From Lytechinus pictus (Eukaryota): DNA of 64,000 nt. This document shows, piece by piece, positions 33,083-44,409 of the stretch. The first letter of the stretch is position 1. Each line of letters opens with the position of its first letter. The translations under genes and the position numbers were made by a program. A model generated the notes under the pieces. It had not been told where the DNA came from, did no database searches, and saw only the letters and a program-made list of their open reading frames with translations. Where the stretch lies: assembly GCF_037042905.1 (NCBI RefSeq), contig NC_087247.1:12648001-12712000 (forward strand), in the 5' to 3' direction.

Positions 33083-36000
33083 ATGGCAAAGTTTCGGATT
33101 GTCTTCTGGTTGGTCGTCATGGCAACGTATCTTACAATAATTTGTGCAGACGATATGGATGAAGATAAGCTCGAGAACTTTCACGACTACGGTAAGCAAG
33201 ATACCAATTTCTATTCATGGGAAATTGACTCTGAGATTTTTTGAATGGTTTCAGAACATAAACAGCATGAAAAGTAGAAGAAACAAAGTATTTTGCAAAT
33301 TTTGATATTTGTGATTGCAAAATATTTTTGAATTTTGAGAGTGAGATTGACACAATGCTGGGTACAAAAGAAATGTAATTCTATTCGAGATGGGAGGGGT
33401 GTATATTTCATTTTCCTCTTTTCATTCTTGTCTCATGTAAAAGGGTAAAGCTTTTTCATATTTGTATGTATATGTAGAGAAACATTAATAAAAGATAATA
33501 CTAATGAATCGTAAGTCTTTATTACACAGGACCACGGCGAGGATAGCATTGATTGAAGCATAATCATTAGGGAGTCATGGAGGAGTTCATTATCTACGAA
33601 GGCATTTACCTAATAGAGTTTTTAAAGAAATGTGAAGTTGCGAACCAACAATGGGCGGAGATACTGTGTGAAAGAAAATTGATTATCTTTTATCATAATA
33701 GAGGGAAGGAAATATAAAAAAGTTAGTTACAAAGGTTTCCACGAATTTCTTGATAAAATTGTATTCTCACTTCTTTTCTTGTAGGAATGAAAAATCCACA
33801 GGTGAAATGCCCCAGCAAGTGCTGGTCAAACCCTCCACCCAAGAAAACCATTTGCGCCACCAACGGCAGAACGTATATCTCGTGGTGTTACTTACGCATG
33901 AGCGCATGCGCACTTCGTCCCGTTGCTGATTGGCAGGTGGCTTACTTGGGATCTTGTGTGCACTCGTATGGGTCCGTCAGCTATACATCATCAAGTGCGT
34001 TTCAGGTTAAACATTCTTACGAGGAGGCGATTCCCCTTGGGCAACTAAAGCGTAAGCAGCAACAACAAAGACAAAGAGCTCACTTTGGAGAGGAGGAGGA
34101 GGAGGAAGAGGAAGAAGAAGAGGAAGAGGAGGAGGAGGAAGAACAAGGAGACTATTCTTCACCCGGTATGACCTTTGCATTGTTTTGCTGAAAAAAATAC
34201 TTATGATTTTTCCCCCTTTGAGAAATCATTATCAATTCGAATTTCATTCATTGCAATTATCGATCATACTCAATAACCATTTTATCCACTGTTGTAAACT
34301 TCCATAGCCTGGAAGTGGATCAGTCCTTTAAAAAAAAGCAAGAAAAGAGAAAAACAAAGCAGTTACAGTCACCCAAGGCAAAGACAGGGGACATTTCCAG
34401 TTGACCATGGGCCTTTTCACACGTGAATCTTGAATCATTATTGTAATGATTGCAATTCGTCTTTAGAATCATCGAACCTTTCACACGCTCACTCGAAAAC
34501 TGATTTGAATTCGAATTCCCGAGCGAAGGCGGTATGTGTCCTTGGTGACTTGTCAATCAAATCACTGCATCGCAAATACAAACTACGATGAGTGCATGAC
34601 AATTGTATTATCTACGGAAGTGCTTGAAAGGTCATGTAAGCTCCGCCCCCAAAAGATGTTTTGGAGTCAAGCCTTTCACACGCAAAAGTCGTAAGGTAAT
34701 TTGAGTGAAACAAAACTGGAATTTAACCTCCGGAGTAGAATTTGAATTCGTGATTGTGATTAGTGTTCGTGATTCTAATCATGTACTAGTTTGGTTATGC
34801 ACGTGCTAAATTTTAGTCATTGGCCTTATTTTTCACTGGAATCATCATTCGAATTACGATTTTTTTTTACCGTGTGAAAGGGCGGTACGTTAACTCTATC
34901 CTATCATGACAACTATCGTAATACTGTCGTAACAATTAAGCATGTTATGTAATGAAATTGACACTCGAAACCAAAGCATGCACCCACAAAATTCAAAGAA
35001 GAAAACAGCGAGAATGAAAGCAGTTTAGTTCTAACCAGAAGTAGACAGGCTTTACCGAAGTTGCACCAAATTTCAGAAAATTCCAACCGCGGACATTAGA
35101 TTGATGTGTGATCATTGAGTGTTTACTGAACATATATTAACCATTAGAAAGAAATCGAGATGTACTCTTTCACAAACCGGCCCATATACTGATGAGAATA
35201 TATATTTCATTTCAGTTGCAACGGGAGGAAGCGAATCAGAGGGGGAAGAAGCAGAATCATCACCATTTGTACCATTTAGTTTTGCAGGTAAGCTAATGTC
35301 CACAAAACATAGAGATGTATATAATTATATATATATTGACAATATAATATATTTCTATGCTTCAAAACATAATTAAAACATATATAGGAATACTGTTGGC
35401 GAACCAAACGGGTTGTATCTTCATACACTGAAGATCTGCCATTATTGCAACGCAATGCATTGCAAAATTTGATATCTTAAGATGAAAAAGCTCATAATTA
35501 TAATAACCTATTTCAACTATTTTTTTCCGGCCTGAATCAATAAGTTGTCCGTATCCCGAACTTTACAACGTTTCACAATGCCTGTTGTCTCGTGACAACA
35601 TTCTGTTGTTCTCCACGTTGTCAAGGTTAATGCGGGTGGTGAAAACGCACTGCTGTAACCTAACAATGGTTTGTAACATACTGAGTTCATACAGCCTCTA
35701 GTTGAATACTATACTAGATGCTAGATTTAGTAGTAAATGAGAATTCAAGATTCATGTATTATAATGTAGATTGGTTATCTGAAACGCTAAACATTTTACA
35801 TTCATTTACAGCCCCTGAATCTGCTGAACCAGAAGAATCAGAAGAACCGGAAGAATCTGAAGAACCTGAAGGTTCGGAACCAGCAGAATCGTCACCGATG
35901 GAACAAGCAGGTATTTCTAACAATGGTTGTATATTCCGTTGAAATGAGTCAATGAGACATTTTACAATTGTATTACACACCTTCCATGCGTTTGAAATGA

Positions 36001-39000
36001 TGAAGATAAATGTCTTGAATAACTAATGTACCCATTTGTATTCATTACAGCCTCTGAATCTGCTGAACCAGAAGAATCCGAAGAACCGGAAGAATCCGAG
36101 GAACCAGAAGGTTCGGAACCAGCAGAGTCCTCGCCTTTGGAACAAGCAGGTATTATTTCTGAAGGTTGCATATTCCATTGAAATGAATCGAGTTAACATG
36201 ATAGGCTACACTGTCTGGTGCCATACACATTTTCAAGCATTCGAAATAATGAAGATCAATGTCTTGAATGAATAATTACTTACCAATTATTTATATCCAT
36301 TTGCAGCCTCTGAATCTGCTGAACCAGAAGAATCCGAAGAACCGGAAGAATCCGAGGAACCGGAAGGCTCGGAACCAGCAGAGTCCTCGCCTTTGGAACA
36401 AGCAGGTATTATTTTTGAAGGTTGCATATTCCATTGAAATGAATCGAGTTAACATGATAGGCTACACTGTCTGGTGCCATACACATTTTCAAGCATTCGA
36501 AATAATGAAGATCAATGTCTTGAATGAATAATTACTTACCAATTATTTATATCCATTTGCAGCCTCTGAATCTGCTGAACCAGAAGAATCCGAAGAACCG
36601 GAAGAATCCGAGGAACCGGAAGGCTCGGAACCAACAGAATCCTCGCCAATGGAACAAGCAGGTAAACCGAATCTCTGAAGACTCTTTTACTGAGTTGATT
36701 TGATCTGAGTTGAGAATAAATGAATAACTGAATTTGTGTTTAGTTGGATTTCTTTTTCTCACCGAAATAATTGAAATGGGTCAAATCAGTCTCGAGACAA
36801 CCAATGACCATGTGGGTTATATCCTCCACCTTTCGCAGTGAGAAGATGTGATGATCATTATGCTACGTTTACGAATTAAATTTCGACTTGGCAGCATGAT
36901 TACTCTATCGAATGATTACTCCATCAAAATGAACAATAATAGTTCCTCTTCACATTGATATGATTAACACTTGTGAAATTTGTGTGAATTCTAAAGTAGA
37001 CTTTATTGGTGTTTGAACCACAGCTTCTGAATCTGAGGAGCCAGAAGAATCGGAAGAGCCTGAAGAATCAGAACCAGCAGAGTCATCACCAGTAGAACAA
37101 GCAGGTATGTCACAACACCACTTGAAAACATATAGTTTGATATACCCAACACTCTAAAAACAAATCAATCAAAAATGACTAGTTAATACTAATAGGGTCA
37201 GCTGGGTGCAACTGTTATTCTAGTCATATTTGACTATTTTCTAGTCGTATTTTACCAGAACATAGTTATTTCTGACTAGAATATATGTCAGAAATGTGAC
37301 AAGACATATTAGTTGCACCCAGCTGACTACTGGTCGAGTCAATTTGACTGATTTGTTCCATCAAAATGAACAATAATAGTTCCTCTTCACATTGATATGA
37401 TTAACACTTGTGAAATTTGTGTGAATTCTAAAGTAGACTTGAATGTGTTTGAACCACAGCTTTTGAATCTGAGGAGCCAGAAGAATCGGAAGAGCCTGAA
37501 GAATCAGAACCAGCAGAGTCATCACCAGTAGAACAAACAGGTATGTCACAACACCACTTAAAAAAATATAGTTTGATATACCCAACACTCTAAAAACAAA
37601 TCAATCAAAAATGACTAGTTAATACTAATAGTGTCAGCTGGGTGCAACTTTTATTCTAGTCATATTTGACTATTTTCTAGTCGTATTTTACCAGAACATA
37701 GTTATTTCTGACTAGAATAAATGTCAGAAATGTGACAAGACATATTAGTTGCACCCAGCTGACTACTGGTCTAGTCAATTTGACTGATTTGTTCCATCAA
37801 AATGAACAATAATAATTCCTCTTCACATTGATATTATTAACACTTGTGAAATTTGTGTGAATTCTAAAGTAGACTTGAATGTGTTTGAACCACAGCTTCT
37901 GAATCTGAGGAGCCAGAAGAATCGGAAGAGCCTGAAGAATCAGAACCAGCAGAGTCATCACCAGTAGAACAAGCAGGTATGTCACAACACCACTTGAAAA
38001 CATATAGTTTGATATACCCAACACTCTAAAAAACAAATAAATCAAAAATGACTAGTTAATACTAATAGGGTCAGCTGGGTGCAACTGTTATTCTAGTCAT
38101 ATTTGACTATTTTGTAATCGTATTTTACTAGAACATACTTATTTCTGACTAGAATATATGTCAGAAATGTGACAAGACATATTAGTTGCACCCAGCTGAC
38201 TACTGGTCTAGTCAATTTGACTGATTTGTTCCATCAAAATGAACAATAATAGTTCCTCTTCACATTGATATGATTAACACTTATGAAATTTGTGTGAATT
38301 CTAAAGTAGACTTGAATGTGTTTGAACCACAGCTTCTGAATCTGAGGAGCCAGAAGAATCGGAAGAGCCTGAAGAATCAGAACCAGCAGAGTCATCACCA
38401 GTAGAACAAGCAGGTATGTCACAACACCACTTGAAAACATATAGTTGATATACCCAACACTCTAAAAACAAATCAATCAAAAATGACTAGTTAATACTAA
38501 TAGGGTCAGCTGGGTGCAACTGTTATTCTAGTCATATTTGACTATTTTGTAATCGTATTTTACTAGAACATACTTATTTCTGACTAGAATATATGTCAGA
38601 AATGTGACAAGACATATTAGTTGCACCCAGCTGACTACTGGTCTAGTCAATTTGACTGATTTGTTCCATCAAAATGAACAATAATAGTTCCTCTTCACAT
38701 TGATATGATTAACACTTGTGAAATTTGTGTGAATTCTAAAGTAGACTTGAATGTGTTTGAACCACAGCTTCTGAATCTGAGGAGCCAGAAGAATCGGAAG
38801 AGCCTGAAGAATCAGAACCAGCAGAGTCATCACCAGTAGAACAAGCAGGTATGTCACAACACCACTTGAAAACATATAGTTGATATACCCAACACTCTAA
38901 AAACAAATCAATCAAAAATGACTAGTTAATACTAATAGGGTCAGCTGGGTGCAACTGTTATTCTAGTCATATTTGACTATTTTCTAATCGTATTTTACTA

Positions 39001-42000
39001 GAACATACTTATTTCTGACTAGAATATATGTCAGAAATGTGACAAGACATATTAGTTGCACCCAGCTGACTACTGGTCTAGTCAATTTGTCTGATTTGTT
39101 CCATCAAAATGAACAATAATAGTTCCTCTTCACATTGATATGATTAACACTTGTGAAATTTGTGTGAATTCTAAAGTAGACTTGAATGTGTTTGAACCAC
39201 AGCTTCTGAATCTGAGGAGCCAGAAGAATCGGAAGAGCCTGAAGAATCAGAACCAGCAGAGTCATCACCAGTAGAACAAGCAGGTATGTCACAACACCAC
39301 TTGAAAACATATAGTTGATATACCCAACACTCTAAAAACAAATCAATCAAAAATGACTAGTTAATACTAATAGGGTCAGCTGGGTGCAACTGTTATTCTA
39401 GTCATATTTGACTATTTTCTAATCGTATTTTACTAGAACATACTTATTTCTGACTAGAATATATGTCAGAAATGTGACAAGACATATTAGTTGCACCCAG
39501 CTGACTACTGGTCTAGTCAATTTGTCTGATTTGTTCCATCAAAATGAACAATAATAGTTCCTCTTCACATTGATATGATTAACACTTGTGAAATTTGTGT
39601 GAATTCTAAAGTAGACTTGAATGTGTTTGAACCACAGCTTCTGAATCTGAGGAGCCAGAAGAATCGGAAGAGCCTGAAGAATCAGAACCAGCAGAGTCAT
39701 CACCAGTAGAACAAGCAGGTATGTCACAACACCACTTGAAAACATATAGTTTGATATACCCAACACTCTAAAAACAAATCAATAAAAAAATGACTAGTTA
39801 ATACTAATAGGGTCAGCTGGGTGCAACTGTTATTCTAGTCATATTTGACTATTTTCTAATTGTTTTTTACTAGCACATAGTTATTTCTGACTAGAATATA
39901 TGACAGAAATGTGACAAGACATATTAGTTGCACCCAGCTGACTACTGGTCAAGTCAATTTGACTGATTTGTTCCATCAAAATGAACAATAATAGTTCCTC
40001 TTCACATTGATATGATTAACACTTGTGAAATTTGTGTGAATTCTAAAGTAGACTTGAATGTGTTTGAACCACAGCTTCTGAATCTGAGGAGCCAGAAGAA
40101 TCGGAAGAGCCTGAAGAATCAGAACCAGCAGAGTCATCACCAGTAGAACAAGCAGGTTTGTCACAACACCACTTGAAAACATATAGTTTGATATACCCAA
40201 CACTCTAAAAACAAATCAATCAAAAATGACTAGTTAATACTAATAGGGTCAGCTGGGTGCAACTGTTATTCTAGTCATATTTGACTATTTTCTAATCGTA
40301 TTTTACTAGAACATAGTTATTTCTATACAATCCACAGTCTCATCTATACCAAAGATGAGGGATATTTAAAGTAATGAGAATGGCAAGCTCAAAAACATAG
40401 CCAGTAACTGACGTTGACGAGATCGTCTTTATGGAATTGCCCCCCTGTCACAAGGGTGGACTCTAATAAAAGTCAGATGAACTCAATGTGTACCAAATCT
40501 CAATTTACAATTTATTTCAGTATAAAAAAATTCTAATATCAAAACATCTGTCTCTGAAGTTCAATTTGTCGAACATATGAAGTCTATAAAGAGAGAACAA
40601 ATAGTAACATTTCTAACGATAAAGACATGTCAAACTATGACTCTGATTCACCGGTTCACAATAAAAAGAAAACAAATGATCCTGTATTGATCGAATTTAT
40701 CATATCAAACTCTCGACCTGTCTCTAAATACAATATCCCTGAAAAGATCCTGCACTGATCTAATCAGTAATCACCAAACTTCAATGTTAAGTGTGTCACG
40801 CTTACACCAGTAATAATATCTTTCAAACGTATCAATCAATCCTTTAACTTTGTTCTATTTCACTTACAATCATAAATCTACTCAAACATTCCCATGAAAG
40901 GATCCTGTATCGACCCACCTTCATAACTTTATCATCACTTATATCTTTCAACTAATATATTTTACTGATTATATTTCAAATATTTTTAAACATCCTCAAC
41001 ATCCGAACTTGAGCGTTTCTCCAAATGTCTTTTAGCTCAAAACTATACTCCAACATCGAACAATCTTACAGATAAGGATCCAAATTCAAAATAACGCTTC
41101 TCACTATCATCAGTCAACTGTGTGGTCATCTTAATAATTGTCTGTTATCTCTGATCTCAAATAAATAAGAGTTTCTGATATTTCTCTCATGGTTATTTAC
41201 AAATTATCTGTCTGGTCGTTTTGTAGCCGAAAAACATCCTTTGAAGTCAGTACTTCGTATCATCGGTCAAAAGTAATTCGTCAATCTCCAAATCGAAAAT
41301 GTCCCAATTCTGAAAATCATCCAACTGTGGAATTTATCCCGATCTTGAAACCATCTAAAATTAAAGACAAAACCAAGAATCTCTCTACGATATATCCTGA
41401 CAATAACACCAACTGGAAGTTATTTTTGTCTATCATGTCATATTATTAATAAAAACTTGTTTGAAATTTGTGTAACTTTTTGAGTTTCAAATCACATTCA
41501 AGAATATTCATAAAGTTTGAATTATCTCTCGCATGAACTCACAAAATACATATTTCATGATACTTATAATCTTCCTCATAAATGCATATCTACTTCATAA
41601 GGCTTATAAATAAATATATAAACATTTCGACATCTCTCAAAGTTTATGTTTGTTTGTTTTTTCTTTATAAAAAATTGAAGAAATCACAAATTAACTCACT
41701 GATGGCTTCTTCAATACACTGTCAAGCTGCGATCTTATGTTTTAATAAATCTTGAATCTTAAACATTCTAAACAATCCAACCAAGGTTAACACCCGAACC
41801 CTAAAAACAATTCAAAGAGGCTCACCTAAGTGCTGACAATTCTACAGTTTACTTCTGATGAAACCACATTTCATCGTTATAATTTGTCTATTCCTCAGGC
41901 GAATCTGAATCTGAATCTCCCCAGCCATCGGAATCTGCTGGTAAGTGATTCATTATTCATTATATTAACAACGAAATCTATAGAAAGTAAAAACTAATTC

Positions 42001-44409
42001 GTTCGAAGAAAAACATTCCACCACATGGAGCTGCACATCCTTATCTTAAATATAGTTCATTCATATTTGTGGTGTGATAAGAGATAAGATGAAGAGCAAC
42101 ACAAAATGAATTCCTTAGGTTGCTGAAGGGAACTAGTACCGTACCGGGGATCAAACCAATGACACTGGAAAGTAAACACAAGTGCTGAACTCCTTTAAAT
42201 AGCGCCACGACACCCGTACTATAGACACCGACAAGTGGTGATGACGAAGCCCTGTATCAACATGGCCCAATCACAGAGGGCGGTCTTTATCTTATAAAAT
42301 ATTTATTTTGGGGTATGGTTGTCTTAAATCTAACAAATAGTCAGTTTTTGTTTCATGCCTAAAGTGATTGCTTGTATTAAGTCTCAAAGACCATAAGTCA
42401 ATTTCGAAATCTCTTTCCCTCCTCCCAAGAAATGACCACGAGTAGTATCATTTGTCTACGTCACCATAACAAAAAAATTCGTAACGTTCACAACGTCTTT
42501 TTTTTATATTCCGGATGGAAATGACAATAAATTCACGTCGACAGCTGTATCATGATACTACTGCCAAGATGCGGTGTTGATGAATTTTGGTAGATCTGCC
42601 ACGAGGTTTTGTAGTTCCTAATATAGAGTTCAACCATATATCAAATACCCTTTTATTTTGTTTCCTTAGAACCTTCTGAAGAAGAAGAAGAGGAAGATGA
42701 CGATGATGACGAGGATGATGAGGATGACGAGGAAAATGAGTCATCGTTCAGCGAAAGCGTAGGTCCGCATACAAAAAAGCCAGGTAGAGATTATTCATGC
42801 TGTGCTTAGGCGAAAGAGAAATGAAATGAAAAAATGACGTGATATTAATGTTTTGATTAATAAGAAATAAAATGGAGTAATAGGGCCTATTGATATTGTC
42901 TTGTTTTTATTTATAGTAGAGAGCAACCCGAGAGAGTATTGAGTCATCAATTAAACATGAAAGTTTTAGTTTGGTCGGTCAGTTTGGCCATAAATTGAAT
43001 ATATTAGAATATGCCTGAAGCCAGCATACCTTAATTTGATTTGATTTGATTTAGTAATTTCCGTTTCACAATTGTACATAATATGATAAACATAACATAA
43101 CAAGGTATAACCTTTATACAAATACAAAAAAAATCCTATTTGAAATGGTCTCCAAACTATATTCAGAAGGGCAAATGTCTCTGAAAGTGTCATAAAAACG
43201 AATAAAATTATTTCATTAAACAATCAATTTTTTGTCTTCGTCTTCGTTGTTTTACAGTCCCCCATAATCGCACGCCATCTACCACTCCCGCGAAGACCAC
43301 TACTATCACCACTGCCACCCCGACCACCGTAGCCGTCCAATCCACCACACCCCGTCTTGTTGCCACCACCCAGGAAGGTTGCCAGGTCTTCTGTCCACTC
43401 TCCGGAACGAAGGTGTGTACCACAGCGGGTGTCTTCGATAGCGAGTGCCTCTTCAACTTCTTCAAGTGTCTGGGTAAGATCGGCGAGGATGACGTGATAC
43501 TTTTCGACGGTGAATGCCCGACGACCCCAGCTCCACCGAAGATCAAGACACCACTGAAGCCGGATTTGATCACGAAGGCCCCTGTCCTACCAACGACGGT
43601 AAGATCACGGTCAACGTTGCTGTACACTGAATACGGTCCGGGTCGCGCTGTACAATGATGCATAGAAGATGGTGGAATTTTTTTCTTTTCATTCTCATGC
43701 AAAGTCACTATTCACTCCAATCATGCACCATATAGCCAAAAAGTAGGTAAAATGTGCAATATTGGGATCATACTGGCACATTTGTTTTGGTTTTGGACTA
43801 GGTGAACCTACTAGATTCGGTTTGGCGAGGCTTTCATTAAAGTTCTTTACATTTCTCGAGATCAGTTATTCAATTTTATATTCCGACAACAACTAATTAC
43901 CCTTGTGGAATTGGGGACGAATGATTCTAATGATGATGCTAACAAGAGTGATTATTTTTCAGAAACACAGAGTACTTCATACAATTTTAATATTGAAAGG
44001 AATTGACATTCATAGCAAGTTTCCAATCTTTCTTTTTAGACAGCAATTGTTTTCAGATACCAAATTGTAAAAGCCCAGAAAGTTCCCAACGTCACCACTG
44101 ATCATAATTATGTATTTCACATCTTTCAAATCTAACCTTTCCTATCAACAGACAAAAGGACGATGTCCCGGATCATGTCCCATGATAAATGACCCCGTCT
44201 GTGCGACCTACACAGCTCTCATCTCTTTCTTCTCGACTCCCCAACCTACCCCCAGCCTCGTCACCTACACCAATGAGTGTGTGTTCCTTCTGCTTCAGTG
44301 TCAAGGCAAGATCAGTCCAGATGACATCATCCTGTACCAGGGAATGTGTCTGGCGCCCCCTACGTTACCCGATGTCGATCTCGCTTACCGAGGAACTGCC
44401 GGACCTTGA
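33083..44409 (+). CDS. Secreted, highly acidic Ser/Glu/Pro-repeat protein with three Kazal-type domains; 19 coding exons, ~786 aa
   Basis: Exons: 33083-33191, 33785-34165, 35216-35287, 35812-35910, 36051-36149, 36307-36405, 36563-36661, 37024-37104, 37460-37540, 37896-37976, 38333-38413, 38768-38848, 39203-39283, 39638-39718, 40075-40155, 41899-41940, 42670-42783, 43258-43598, 44152-44409. All GT-AG; total 2361 nt ending in TGA. Signal peptide MAKFRIVFWLVVMATYLTIICA. Six-Cys Kazal domains: CPSKC...ICATNGRTYISWC...C...GSC; CQVFCPLSGTKVCTTAGVFDSEC...C...GEC; CPGSCPMINDPVC...TYTNEC...C...GMC. Confidence 0.85.
34409..34883. mobile_element. PIF/Harbinger-like MITE in intron 2 of gene 2
   Basis: Terminal inverted repeats GCCTTTTCACACG / CGTGTGAAAGGGC. 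The superfamily is inferred from the terminal motif only. Confidence 0.55.
35790..36665 (+). repeat. Tandem array of four 99-bp acidic exons with their introns (periods 239, 256, 256 bp)
   Basis: Each exon encodes A(P/S)ESAEPEESEEPEESEEPEGSEP(A/T)ESSP(M/L)EQA. Introns 36150-36306 and 36406-36562 are nearly identical. Confidence 0.92.
36921..40324 (+). repeat. Tandem array of eight ~436-bp exon+intron units (last one truncated), each with an 81-bp acidic exon
   Basis: Units start CCATCAAAATGAACAATAAT. Exon-to-exon periods are 436, 436, 437, 435, 435, 435, 437. The exon encodes ASESEEPEESEEPEESEPAESSPVEQA (copy 2 has AFE... and ...EQT). Confidence 0.96.
37150..37357. mobile_element. MITE-like fold-back element in the intron of each 436-bp unit (first copy given)
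   Basis: Begins CACTCTAAAAA. Perfect 17-bp inverted repeat GTCAGCTGGGTGCAACT / AGTTGCACCCAGCTGAC, extended imperfectly by AACAAATCAATCAAAAATGACTAG / AGTCAATTTGACTGATTTGTT. The right terminus is missing at the unit junction. Confidence 0.65.
42085..42216 (-). mobile_element. Degenerate tRNA-derived SINE
   Basis: Minus strand GTGTCGTGGCGC...GGTTTGATCCCCGG (B-box-like), followed by the SINE-body-like CCCTTCAGCAA...TTGCTCT. Confidence 0.45.

What the first reader, a model, noticed from the sequence alone, without database searches (positions are those of the whole stretch)
37150..40324. A fold-back element in every repeated intron marks the duplication breakpoint and could drive exon skipping or circular RNA
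Seen: each intron has a MITE-like inverted repeat with a perfect 17-bp core. The unit junction falls exactly where the right arm is cut off (GATTTGTT|CCATCAAAATG), and the last copy stops mid-element at ~40324. Known: intronic inverted repeats flanking exons promote skipping and back-splicing, and hairpins promote breakage. Inference: the element may have seeded the duplication. Because arms from different introns can pair, any number of in-frame acidic exons could be looped out, giving a ladder of isoforms differing by 27 aa.
Basis: partly seen in the sequence, partly recalled or inferred. Interest (0 to 1): 0.7.

Follow-up and report, generated by a model that had tools for sequence, protein, structure and literature searches.

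The report
Transposon hairpin inside amplified exon units
A small fold-back jumping-gene remnant was copied along with an 81-base exon when that exon-plus-intron block was amplified about eight-fold in a gene for an acidic secreted protein; it marks the copy junction, but the RNA on hand shows ordinary exon-to-exon splicing and no sign of exon skipping.

Summary
A 435-bp unit is repeated 7.8 times at 36921-40324. Each unit holds an 81-nt in-frame acidic exon and a 354-356-nt intron.

Each intron contains a 208-nt fold-back element with a perfect 17-bp core. The element is a true MITE:
- It has hundreds of dispersed copies of about 211 bp.
- Its terminal inverted repeats begin CACTC.
- Its target-site duplication is 2 bp, mostly TA.

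All window copies lack the last 9 nt of the right terminal repeat. That truncation is the tandem junction (GATTTGTT|CCATC). The eighth copy stops at element position about 125.

Shared private mutations show one insertion that was later amplified with the unit.

Whether the hairpin caused the duplication cannot be decided:
- Both right-hand breakpoints lie in the element, which is suggestive at roughly p 0.01-0.05, post hoc, n=1.
- An older 256-bp exon array in the same gene has no fold-back.
- Another tandem duplication elsewhere in the genome carries the MITE as an internal passenger.

Exon skipping and circRNA are untested. Seven of the eight exons are identical, so short reads cannot tell the isoforms apart. 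RNA contigs show exon-exon and exon-to-downstream joints, and a depth ratio of 7.7 fits near-full inclusion.

This is an ordinary kind of event, neatly documented.

The parts
36921..40324 (+). Tandem array of 7.8 exon+intron units (period 435-437). Unit starts: 36921, 37358, 37794, 38231, 38666, 39101, 39536, 39973.
   Evidence: TRF. Unit alignment: units 5 and 6 are identical, and the edge units differ most.
37024..37104 (+). Repeated 81-nt acidic exon, copy 1. The other copies are 37460-37540 (two substitutions), 37896-37976, 38333-38413, 38768-38848, 39203-39283, 39638-39718 and 40075-40155.
   Evidence: AG/GT boundaries read. RNA joint 37104|37024 ('goes back 81'), and the same joint laid at 40155|40075.
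37150..37357 (+). Fold-back MITE, copy 1, lacking the last 9 nt of its right terminal repeat and the TSD. The other copies are 37586-37793, 38022-38230, 38458-38665, 38893-39100, 39328-39535 and 39764-39972.
40201..40324 (+). Eighth MITE copy, left part only (element positions 1 to about 125). The array ends here.
   Evidence: (aligns to positions 2-119 of a full copy).
37350..37368 (+). Tandem junction: truncated right terminal repeat ...GATTTGTT | CCATCAAAATG. The same junction occurs at 37793|37794, 38230|38231, 38665|38666, 39100|39101, 39535|39536 and 39972|39973.
36662..36920 (+). Unique 5' part of the intron before the array. It has no MITE homology, and the array starts at its end.
40325..40445 (+). 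Unique sequence directly after the broken eighth MITE copy, part of the 1.7-kb last intron.
   Evidence: no other genomic copy of the first 120 nt.
41899..41940 (+). 42-nt exon to which the repeated exon is spliced. It is followed by exon 42670-42783.
   Evidence: RNA contig joints, corrected by the stated 'cut' offsets.
35795..36664 (+). Older 256-bp exon+intron array: four 99-nt acidic exons at 35812-35910, 36051-36149, 36307-36405 and 36563-36661. It has no fold-back element and serves as an internal control.

Best explanation
One copy of a roughly 211-bp fold-back MITE inserted into the intron 45 nt downstream of an 81-nt acidic exon of a secreted, Kazal-domain gene. The family has CACTC-type terminal repeats and a 2-bp TSD.

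Later a tandem duplication joined a point 9 nt inside the MITE's right end to a point 103 nt upstream of the exon. That made an exon+intron unit whose intron is a chimaera of the two old introns. Unequal recombination between units then raised the number to eight, with the youngest copies in the middle.

A second rearrangement removed the right half of the last MITE copy. It may have been part of the same founding event or a later deletion.

The MITE is a passenger that happens to mark the junction. It may have favoured the breaks, but this is unproven. In the pre-mRNA each complete copy most likely folds on itself as soon as it is transcribed. That shortens the effective intron, and the eight exons are spliced in series into the mRNA.

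Shown: the anatomy, the family membership, the single origin, and the serial splicing joints. Inferred: the order of events, the recombination mechanism, and the co-transcriptional self-folding.
For: - Dispersed family with TIRs and a 2-bp TSD.
- All eight window copies share private markers against the family consensus, including a 6-nt insertion and several substitutions. They share the same truncation and are about 6% from the consensus, like other copies. Units differ from each other by 0-16 positions of about 436. This means one insertion first and amplification later.
- The non-MITE part of the unit is unique to this locus.
- The array starts at 36921 with no MITE before it.
- RNA contigs show the exon|exon joint at depth 865. 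They also show the chain repeated exon -> 41899-41940 -> 42670-42783 -> next exon at depth 113, with GT..AG ends. Four raw reads from a ribo-depleted run show the exon|exon joint.
- The depth ratio is 7.7. My count from the genome arrangement predicts 6.9 for full inclusion.
- The single element folds at -82 kcal/mol. In a two-unit fold the self-paired form holds 70% of the ensemble.
- Controls: the MITE-free 256-bp array in the same gene, and a 1119-bp tandem duplication elsewhere with an intact internal MITE.
Against: - Both right-hand breakpoints (element positions about 202 and about 125) fall in the MITE. The MITE was only about 12-17% of the ancestral downstream intron, so a causal role of the palindrome is not excluded.
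- Equilibrium folding does not forbid inter-intron pairing. It gives 13% for an internal pair. Pairing across exon 8 is strongly favoured, because the left arm of copy 8 has no partner of its own.
- Contig depth is a rough measure, and the RNA sample may carry a different copy number.
- Raw-read support is only a handful of reads.
Confidence: 0.75

Rival explanations
1. The palindromic MITE caused the founding rearrangement. Replication through the hairpin stalled or the nascent strand snapped back. It then switched template twice: back to 36921 from element position about 202, and forward to 40325 from position about 125. One complex event gave a 1.8-copy founder that was later expanded.
For: - Both right-hand breakpoints are inside the element.
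- A 7.8-copy array cannot arise from simple duplication of a unique segment, so a second junction is needed, and it also lies in the MITE.
- Junction microhomology is 1 nt, as in template-switch or end-joining events.
- Palindromes are known fragile sites (review PMC7999016, found; title and abstract only read).
Against: - The case is n=1 and was selected post hoc.
- The 256-bp array in the same gene formed without any inverted repeat.
- The 1119-bp tandem duplication on another contig has the MITE intact and internal.
- The second breakpoint is about 24 nt from the palindrome centre, not at it.
- A simple later deletion explains the last copy equally well.
Confidence: 0.25
2. Arms of MITEs in different introns pair in the pre-mRNA and loop out one or more 81-nt exons. 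This gives a ladder of isoforms differing by 27 aa and/or circular RNAs.
For: - All exons are 81 nt and phase-symmetric.
- Inter-intron pairing is nearly isoenergetic with self-pairing. The MFE of two units is the inter-element form, and P(trans) is 0.13.
- The right arm of copy 7 pairing with the left arm of copy 8 across exon 8 has P 0.99 at equilibrium.
- Reverse-complementary matches in flanking introns promote both back-splicing and skipping in C. elegans (PMC8330042).
Against: - Each complete MITE has its own partner 8-90 nt away, transcribed hundreds of bases before any partner in the next intron.
- Pairing within an intron competes with pairing across exons (statement and reference in PMC7943259).
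- The RNA depth ratio of 7.7 against 6.9 expected fits near-full inclusion.
- No joint from the array to any exon other than 41899 was listed.
- A one-exon circle of 81 nt would be unusually small.
Confidence: 0.15
3. The array, or its copy number, is an assembly artefact. Alternatively, the MITE inserted independently into each intron.
For: Repeats 98% alike are hard to assemble. I could not lay DNA reads.
Against: - Units carry distinct substitutions in a graded pattern.
- An RNA data set shows the 81-nt cycle contig at about 7.7 times the depth of the flanking exons, as eight exon copies predict.
- Independent insertion is excluded by the shared truncation and shared private mutations.
Confidence: 0.04

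Closest known systems
MITEs (miniature inverted-repeat transposable elements) of cut-and-paste DNA transposons with 2-bp target duplications: Tc1/mariner 'Stowaway-like' or, from memory, CMC/Mirage-type with CAC... ends
   Same: About 211 bp, non-coding, near-palindromic, with terminal inverted repeats, a 2-bp TSD (mostly TA) and hundreds of dispersed copies at about 90% identity.
   Different: The TSD is not strictly TA: TG/TG and CA/CA pairs were also seen. No autonomous partner was sought, so the superfamily is open. The window copies are truncated and can no longer be mobile.
Tandem exon duplication / exon+intron unit amplification in repetitive secreted proteins (review PMC9013439)
   Same: Whole exon+intron blocks are repeated head to tail. 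The exons are in-frame and phase-symmetric. Homogenised central copies point to unequal recombination.
   Different: Here the exons are used in series to lengthen an acidic domain, as far as the RNA shows. This is not the mutually exclusive choice stressed in that review. The junction can be placed to the base because it cuts a recognisable transposon.
Inverted-repeat (IRAlu / reverse-complementary-match) driven back-splicing and exon skipping (PMC8330042; competition rule quoted in PMC7943259)
   Same: Complementary sequences lie in the introns on both sides of every repeated exon.
   Different: Each intron carries both arms, so self-pairing competes. No back-splice or skipped product has been seen. 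Identical exons make such products invisible to short reads.
Palindrome-associated rearrangement / replication template switching (FoSTeS/MMBIR; palindrome fragility review PMC7999016)
   Same: The breakpoints lie inside a long near-perfect palindrome, with 1-nt junction microhomology.
   Different: There is no independent evidence of causation. Other duplications in the same gene and genome did not need the palindrome.

Membership tests
MITE (non-autonomous class II transposon) | Terminal inverted repeats | tested here: met
   Full copies read CACTCTAAAAACAAATCAGTC...GACTGATTTGTTTTAAGAGTG. The window copies lack the last 9 nt.
MITE (non-autonomous class II transposon) | Target-site duplication flanking independent copies | tested here: met
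   2-bp direct duplications: TA/TA in 7 copies, TG/TG in 2-3, CA/CA in 1. Three more pairs differ by one base. This cannot be assessed for the window copy, because its right end is lost.
MITE (non-autonomous class II transposon) | Short, non-coding, many dispersed copies | tested here: met
   Length about 211 bp. There were 797 candidates, and 40 scored hits on 15 or more contigs. There were 662 terminus matches against 0 for the control.
MITE (non-autonomous class II transposon) | Autonomous partner with the same ends | not tested
   No search for a transposase-bearing element was made.
Tc1/mariner (Stowaway-like) superfamily | Strict TA target duplication | tested here: inconclusive
   TA dominates, but matched TG/TG and CA/CA pairs occur. 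CAC... ends with a 2-bp TSD would also fit CMC/Mirage; that assignment is from memory and untested.
Tandem exon (exon+intron) duplication | Head-to-tail repeats that each contain a complete exon with both splice sites, in frame | tested here: met
   The exons are 81 nt with AG/GT boundaries.
Tandem exon (exon+intron) duplication | Repeated exons present in RNA | tested here: met
   The exon|exon joint and the joint to the downstream exons appear in RNA contigs and raw reads.
Inverted-repeat-driven circRNA / exon-skipping locus | Complementary sequences in the introns flanking the exon | tested here: met
   There is a MITE in every intron of the array. Computed inter-intron pairing is possible.
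Inverted-repeat-driven circRNA / exon-skipping locus | Back-splice junctions or skipped isoforms in RNA | not testable with these tools
   Seven of the eight exons are identical. Normal, skipped and back-spliced junctions therefore have the same sequence. The depth ratio of 7.7 against 6.9 expected argues against heavy skipping.

The most novel reading that the evidence does not exclude
The palindromic MITE was the replication obstacle that triggered a two-switch founding rearrangement. Its copies, and above all the partnerless left arm in the last intron, now pair across exons. The gene then makes a length-variable acidic domain (an 81-nt ladder) or small circles. Alternatively, the seven roughly 95-bp intronic hairpins feed a small-RNA pathway against this transposon family.
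Probability: 0.1. Interest if true: 0.55.

Novelty: new member of a known kind. Interest (0 to 1): 0.3.

Why it matters
The locus is a clean, base-resolved record of how a repetitive acidic protein domain grows. The order was transposon insertion first, then exon+intron duplication with a junction that can be read because it cuts the transposon, then amplification.

It offers a natural test of two general ideas: whether palindromic transposons bias where exon duplications break, and whether self-complementary elements in every intron help or hinder serial splicing. By itself it does not change either idea.

Tried and rejected
- Independent MITE insertions in each intron. Rejected: the copies share the same truncation and private mutations.
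- Right half of the last MITE displaced by a later insertion. Rejected: no right-half homology lies anywhere downstream in the window, and the 120 nt after the break are unique. The next dispersed repeat starts only at 40446.
- A paralogous or single-copy version of the unit elsewhere in the genome, as a pre-duplication state. None was found.
- An orthologous locus in a relative. The representative search found only a 166-aa fragment at 75% identity (P0001). Its contig is 1.7 kb, too short to reach the array.
- Annotated isoforms of the protein. The full-length protein is not among the representatives.
- Homology between the 435-unit introns and the 256-unit introns, to find an empty site. Only the exons align.
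- 'Self-pairing must win thermodynamically'. My own calculation did not bear this out. The argument for self-pairing is kinetic only.
- No search was made with a joined (spliced) protein model. Exons were searched one at a time by reference. One local script concatenated three exon pieces for a frame check, with coordinates off by one. I do not rely on it. Frames are taken from exon lengths and the joints.
Full report
**What is there**

TRF finds a 435-bp period repeated 7.8 times at 36920-40324 with 98% matches. Reading the sequence and aligning the units gives eight units. They start at 36921, 37358, 37794, 38231, 38666, 39101, 39536 and 39973.

Each unit holds an 81-nt exon bounded by AG and GT. 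The first is 37024-37104 and the last is 40075-40155. The exon encodes (A)SESEEPEESEEPEESEPAESSPVEQA.

All exons are identical except copy 2, which has two substitutions. The exons are phase-symmetric, so removing any number of them would keep the frame.

**The gene**

- It starts with a signal-peptide-like ORF at 33083.
- It has a Kazal_2 domain at 33787-34080 (Pfam E 2.8e-8).
- It has an older 256-bp array of four 99-nt acidic exons at 35795-36664.
- After the 435-bp array come a 42-nt exon (41899-41940), an acidic exon (42670-42783), and two Kazal-like exons.

Earlier notes of this scan call the genome a sea urchin, Lytechinus pictus. I did not check that.

**The fold-back element**

The 17-bp core GTCAGCTGGGTGCAACT occurs 15 times in the window, as 8 left arms and 7 right arms, with none expected by chance.

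The complementarity extends over nearly the whole 208 nt. As RNA, one copy folds at -82.4 kcal/mol, z -9.7.

**It is a true MITE**

The element of unit 1 found 797 candidates in the window's own genome. The scored copies are about 90% identical and lie on many contigs.

With flanks added, homology stops at 37149 on the left. On the right, the dispersed copies run 9 nt further than the window copy.

Full copies are about 211 bp: xx|CACTCTAAAAACAAATCAGTC ... GACTGATTTGTTTTAAGAGTG|xx, where xx is a 2-bp direct duplication. I counted TA/TA in seven independent copies, TG/TG in two or three, and CA/CA in one.

The full right terminus plus TA, with up to 2 mismatches, occurs 662 times in the genome, against 0 for the control pattern. 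This count includes left ends on the other strand.

The superfamily is open. TA dominance suggests Tc1/mariner. CAC... ends with a non-strict 2-bp duplication would, from memory, also fit CMC/Mirage.

**The junction**

Every window copy ends ...GACTGATTTGTT and is followed by CCATCAAAATG. That sequence opens the array at 36921, where it is preceded by unique intron sequence with no MITE homology.

So the missing 9 nt of the right terminal repeat, and the target duplication, are missing because the tandem junction lies there. 'Exactly where the arm is cut off' is not an independent coincidence, though.

Exact microhomology at the junction is one T. A TGATT patch lies close by in both partners but is out of register.

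The eighth copy covers only 40200-40324, element positions 1 to about 125. That is about 24 nt past the centre of symmetry. No right half lies downstream in the window.

The next 120 nt are unique in the genome. A different dispersed repeat begins at 40446.

**History**

Against a consensus of 20 dispersed copies, all eight window copies share the same private changes: a 6-nt insertion, several substitutions, and the same truncation. They are about 6-8% from the consensus, like other family members at 4-11%.

Units differ from each other by 0-16 positions. Units 5 and 6 are identical, unit 4 is three changes away, and the edge units are the most diverged.

My reading is one insertion, then a founding duplication, then amplification and homogenisation by unequal recombination. 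That step needs only unit-to-unit homology.

A non-integer array cannot come from duplicating a unique segment. A second junction (40324|40325) is therefore required. It could be a later deletion, or a second template switch in the founding event.

**Did the hairpin cause it?**

Both right-hand breakpoints lie in the MITE. The MITE made up roughly 12-17% of the ancestral downstream intron. That intron is 1.74 kb today, including a repeat of at least 535 bp that may be younger.

Two independent random breakpoints would both land in the element about 1-3% of the time. But this is one locus, noticed after the fact.

Against a necessary role:

- The 256-bp exon+intron array in the same gene has no inverted repeat better than 73-86% over 14-22 nt.
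- A 1119-bp, 1.9-copy tandem duplication on another contig carries this MITE complete and internal to the unit (L044).

I rate causation at about one in four.

**RNA**

One call was allowed, so I laid three ribo-depleted raw-read runs and one contig set on 36850-42849.

The contig set contains spliced forms:

- A 111-nt contig, which is 81 + 30, the signature of a perfect 81-nt cycle at k=31. It joins exon end to exon start and has depth 865.
- A 427-nt contig running from the repeated exon into 41899-41940, then 42670-42783, then the next exon. It has GT..AG ends and depth 113.

One raw-read run gave four reads with the exon|exon joint. The tool laid that joint at both the first and the last exon copy, and reports four reads as fitting two places. 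Their strand is the one expected of a + strand RNA if the library is of the usual stranded kind.

Reads on the MITE itself run off into TTAAGAGTGTA..., so they come from other, complete copies elsewhere.

From the genome arrangement I count that each k-mer of the cycle should occur 6.9 times per fully spliced transcript. The observed ratio is 7.7. That fits inclusion of all, or nearly all, copies and argues against heavy skipping. Contig depth is a rough measure, and the sample's copy number is unknown.

Normal, skipped and back-spliced junctions among identical exons have the same sequence. Short reads therefore cannot test the ladder or the circles.

**Folding**

I expected self-pairing to win outright, and it does not.

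- For two adjacent units, the minimum-energy structure is the inter-element form. In the ensemble the self-paired state has 70% and the left arm of one copy paired with the right arm of the next has 13%.
- At the array's end, the left arm of copy 8 has no partner of its own. Pairing of the right arm of copy 7 with it, across exon 8, takes 99% at equilibrium.

The case for self-pairing in vivo is therefore kinetic. Each right arm emerges 8-90 nt after its left arm, and hundreds of bases before any arm of the next intron. Pairing within an intron is known to compete with pairing across exons (PMC7943259, citing the primary work).

Its application here remains possible but unsupported.

**Verdict**

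This is a real and tidy example of a known kind of event. A MITE was captured in, and marks the junction of, a recently amplified exon+intron unit that lengthens an acidic domain.

The causal and splicing claims are open and need long-read cDNA. No search was made with a joined spliced model; exons were searched singly by reference.

Noticed in passing
window 35795-36664: An older tandem array of 256-bp exon+intron units: four 99-nt acidic exons, 88% matches. The exons are related to the 81-nt exons (one 18-nt EEPEES-type block longer), but the introns are unrelated and hold no fold-back.
   Followed up: partly
window 40446-40980 (to ~41100): A second dispersed repeat in the last intron, with at least 28 genomic copies at about 70-76% identity. 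It was not classified.
   Followed up: no
window 41899-41940: A 42-nt exon (GESESESPQPSESA-like) between the array and the D/E-rich exon 42670-42783. It is supported by an RNA contig with GT..AG joints.
   Followed up: partly
window 39926-39942 with 40248-40264: The left arm of the truncated eighth MITE has no partner in its own intron. Computed equilibrium pairing with the right arm of copy 7, across exon 8, is 0.99. This is the one place where looping-out is thermodynamically favoured.
   Followed up: partly
L044:2638-4765 (G000:C11:5976137-5978264): A 1119-bp tandem duplication (1.9 copies, 93%) that contains a complete copy of the same MITE inside each unit, away from the unit boundary.
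   Followed up: partly
L045:980-1428 (G000:C11:8346479-8346927): A truncated and a full copy of the MITE abut each other, followed by a 26-nt terminal fragment. This may be adjacent or nested insertion.
   Followed up: no
L010, L011, L012, L014 (G000:C17, 11.96-12.79 Mb) and L013, L016, L018 (G000:C16, 12.0-12.5 Mb): The same MITE insertion with identical flanks recurs three to four times over hundreds of kb. This points to large segmental duplications.
   Followed up: no
dispersed MITE copies (L008, L022, L030, L012): The matched 2-bp target duplications are not always TA (TG/TG and CA/CA occur). This is unusual for Tc1/mariner and leaves the superfamily open.
   Followed up: partly
window 33083-44409: The host gene has a signal peptide, a Kazal_2 domain, long acidic S/E/P repeats with several S-x-E sites per exon, a Thr-rich linker, and two Kazal-like C-terminal exons. 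The nearest library protein is a 166-aa fragment at 75% identity (P0001).
   Followed up: partly
window (whole): The window contains 225 N. I did not locate or examine them.
   Followed up: no
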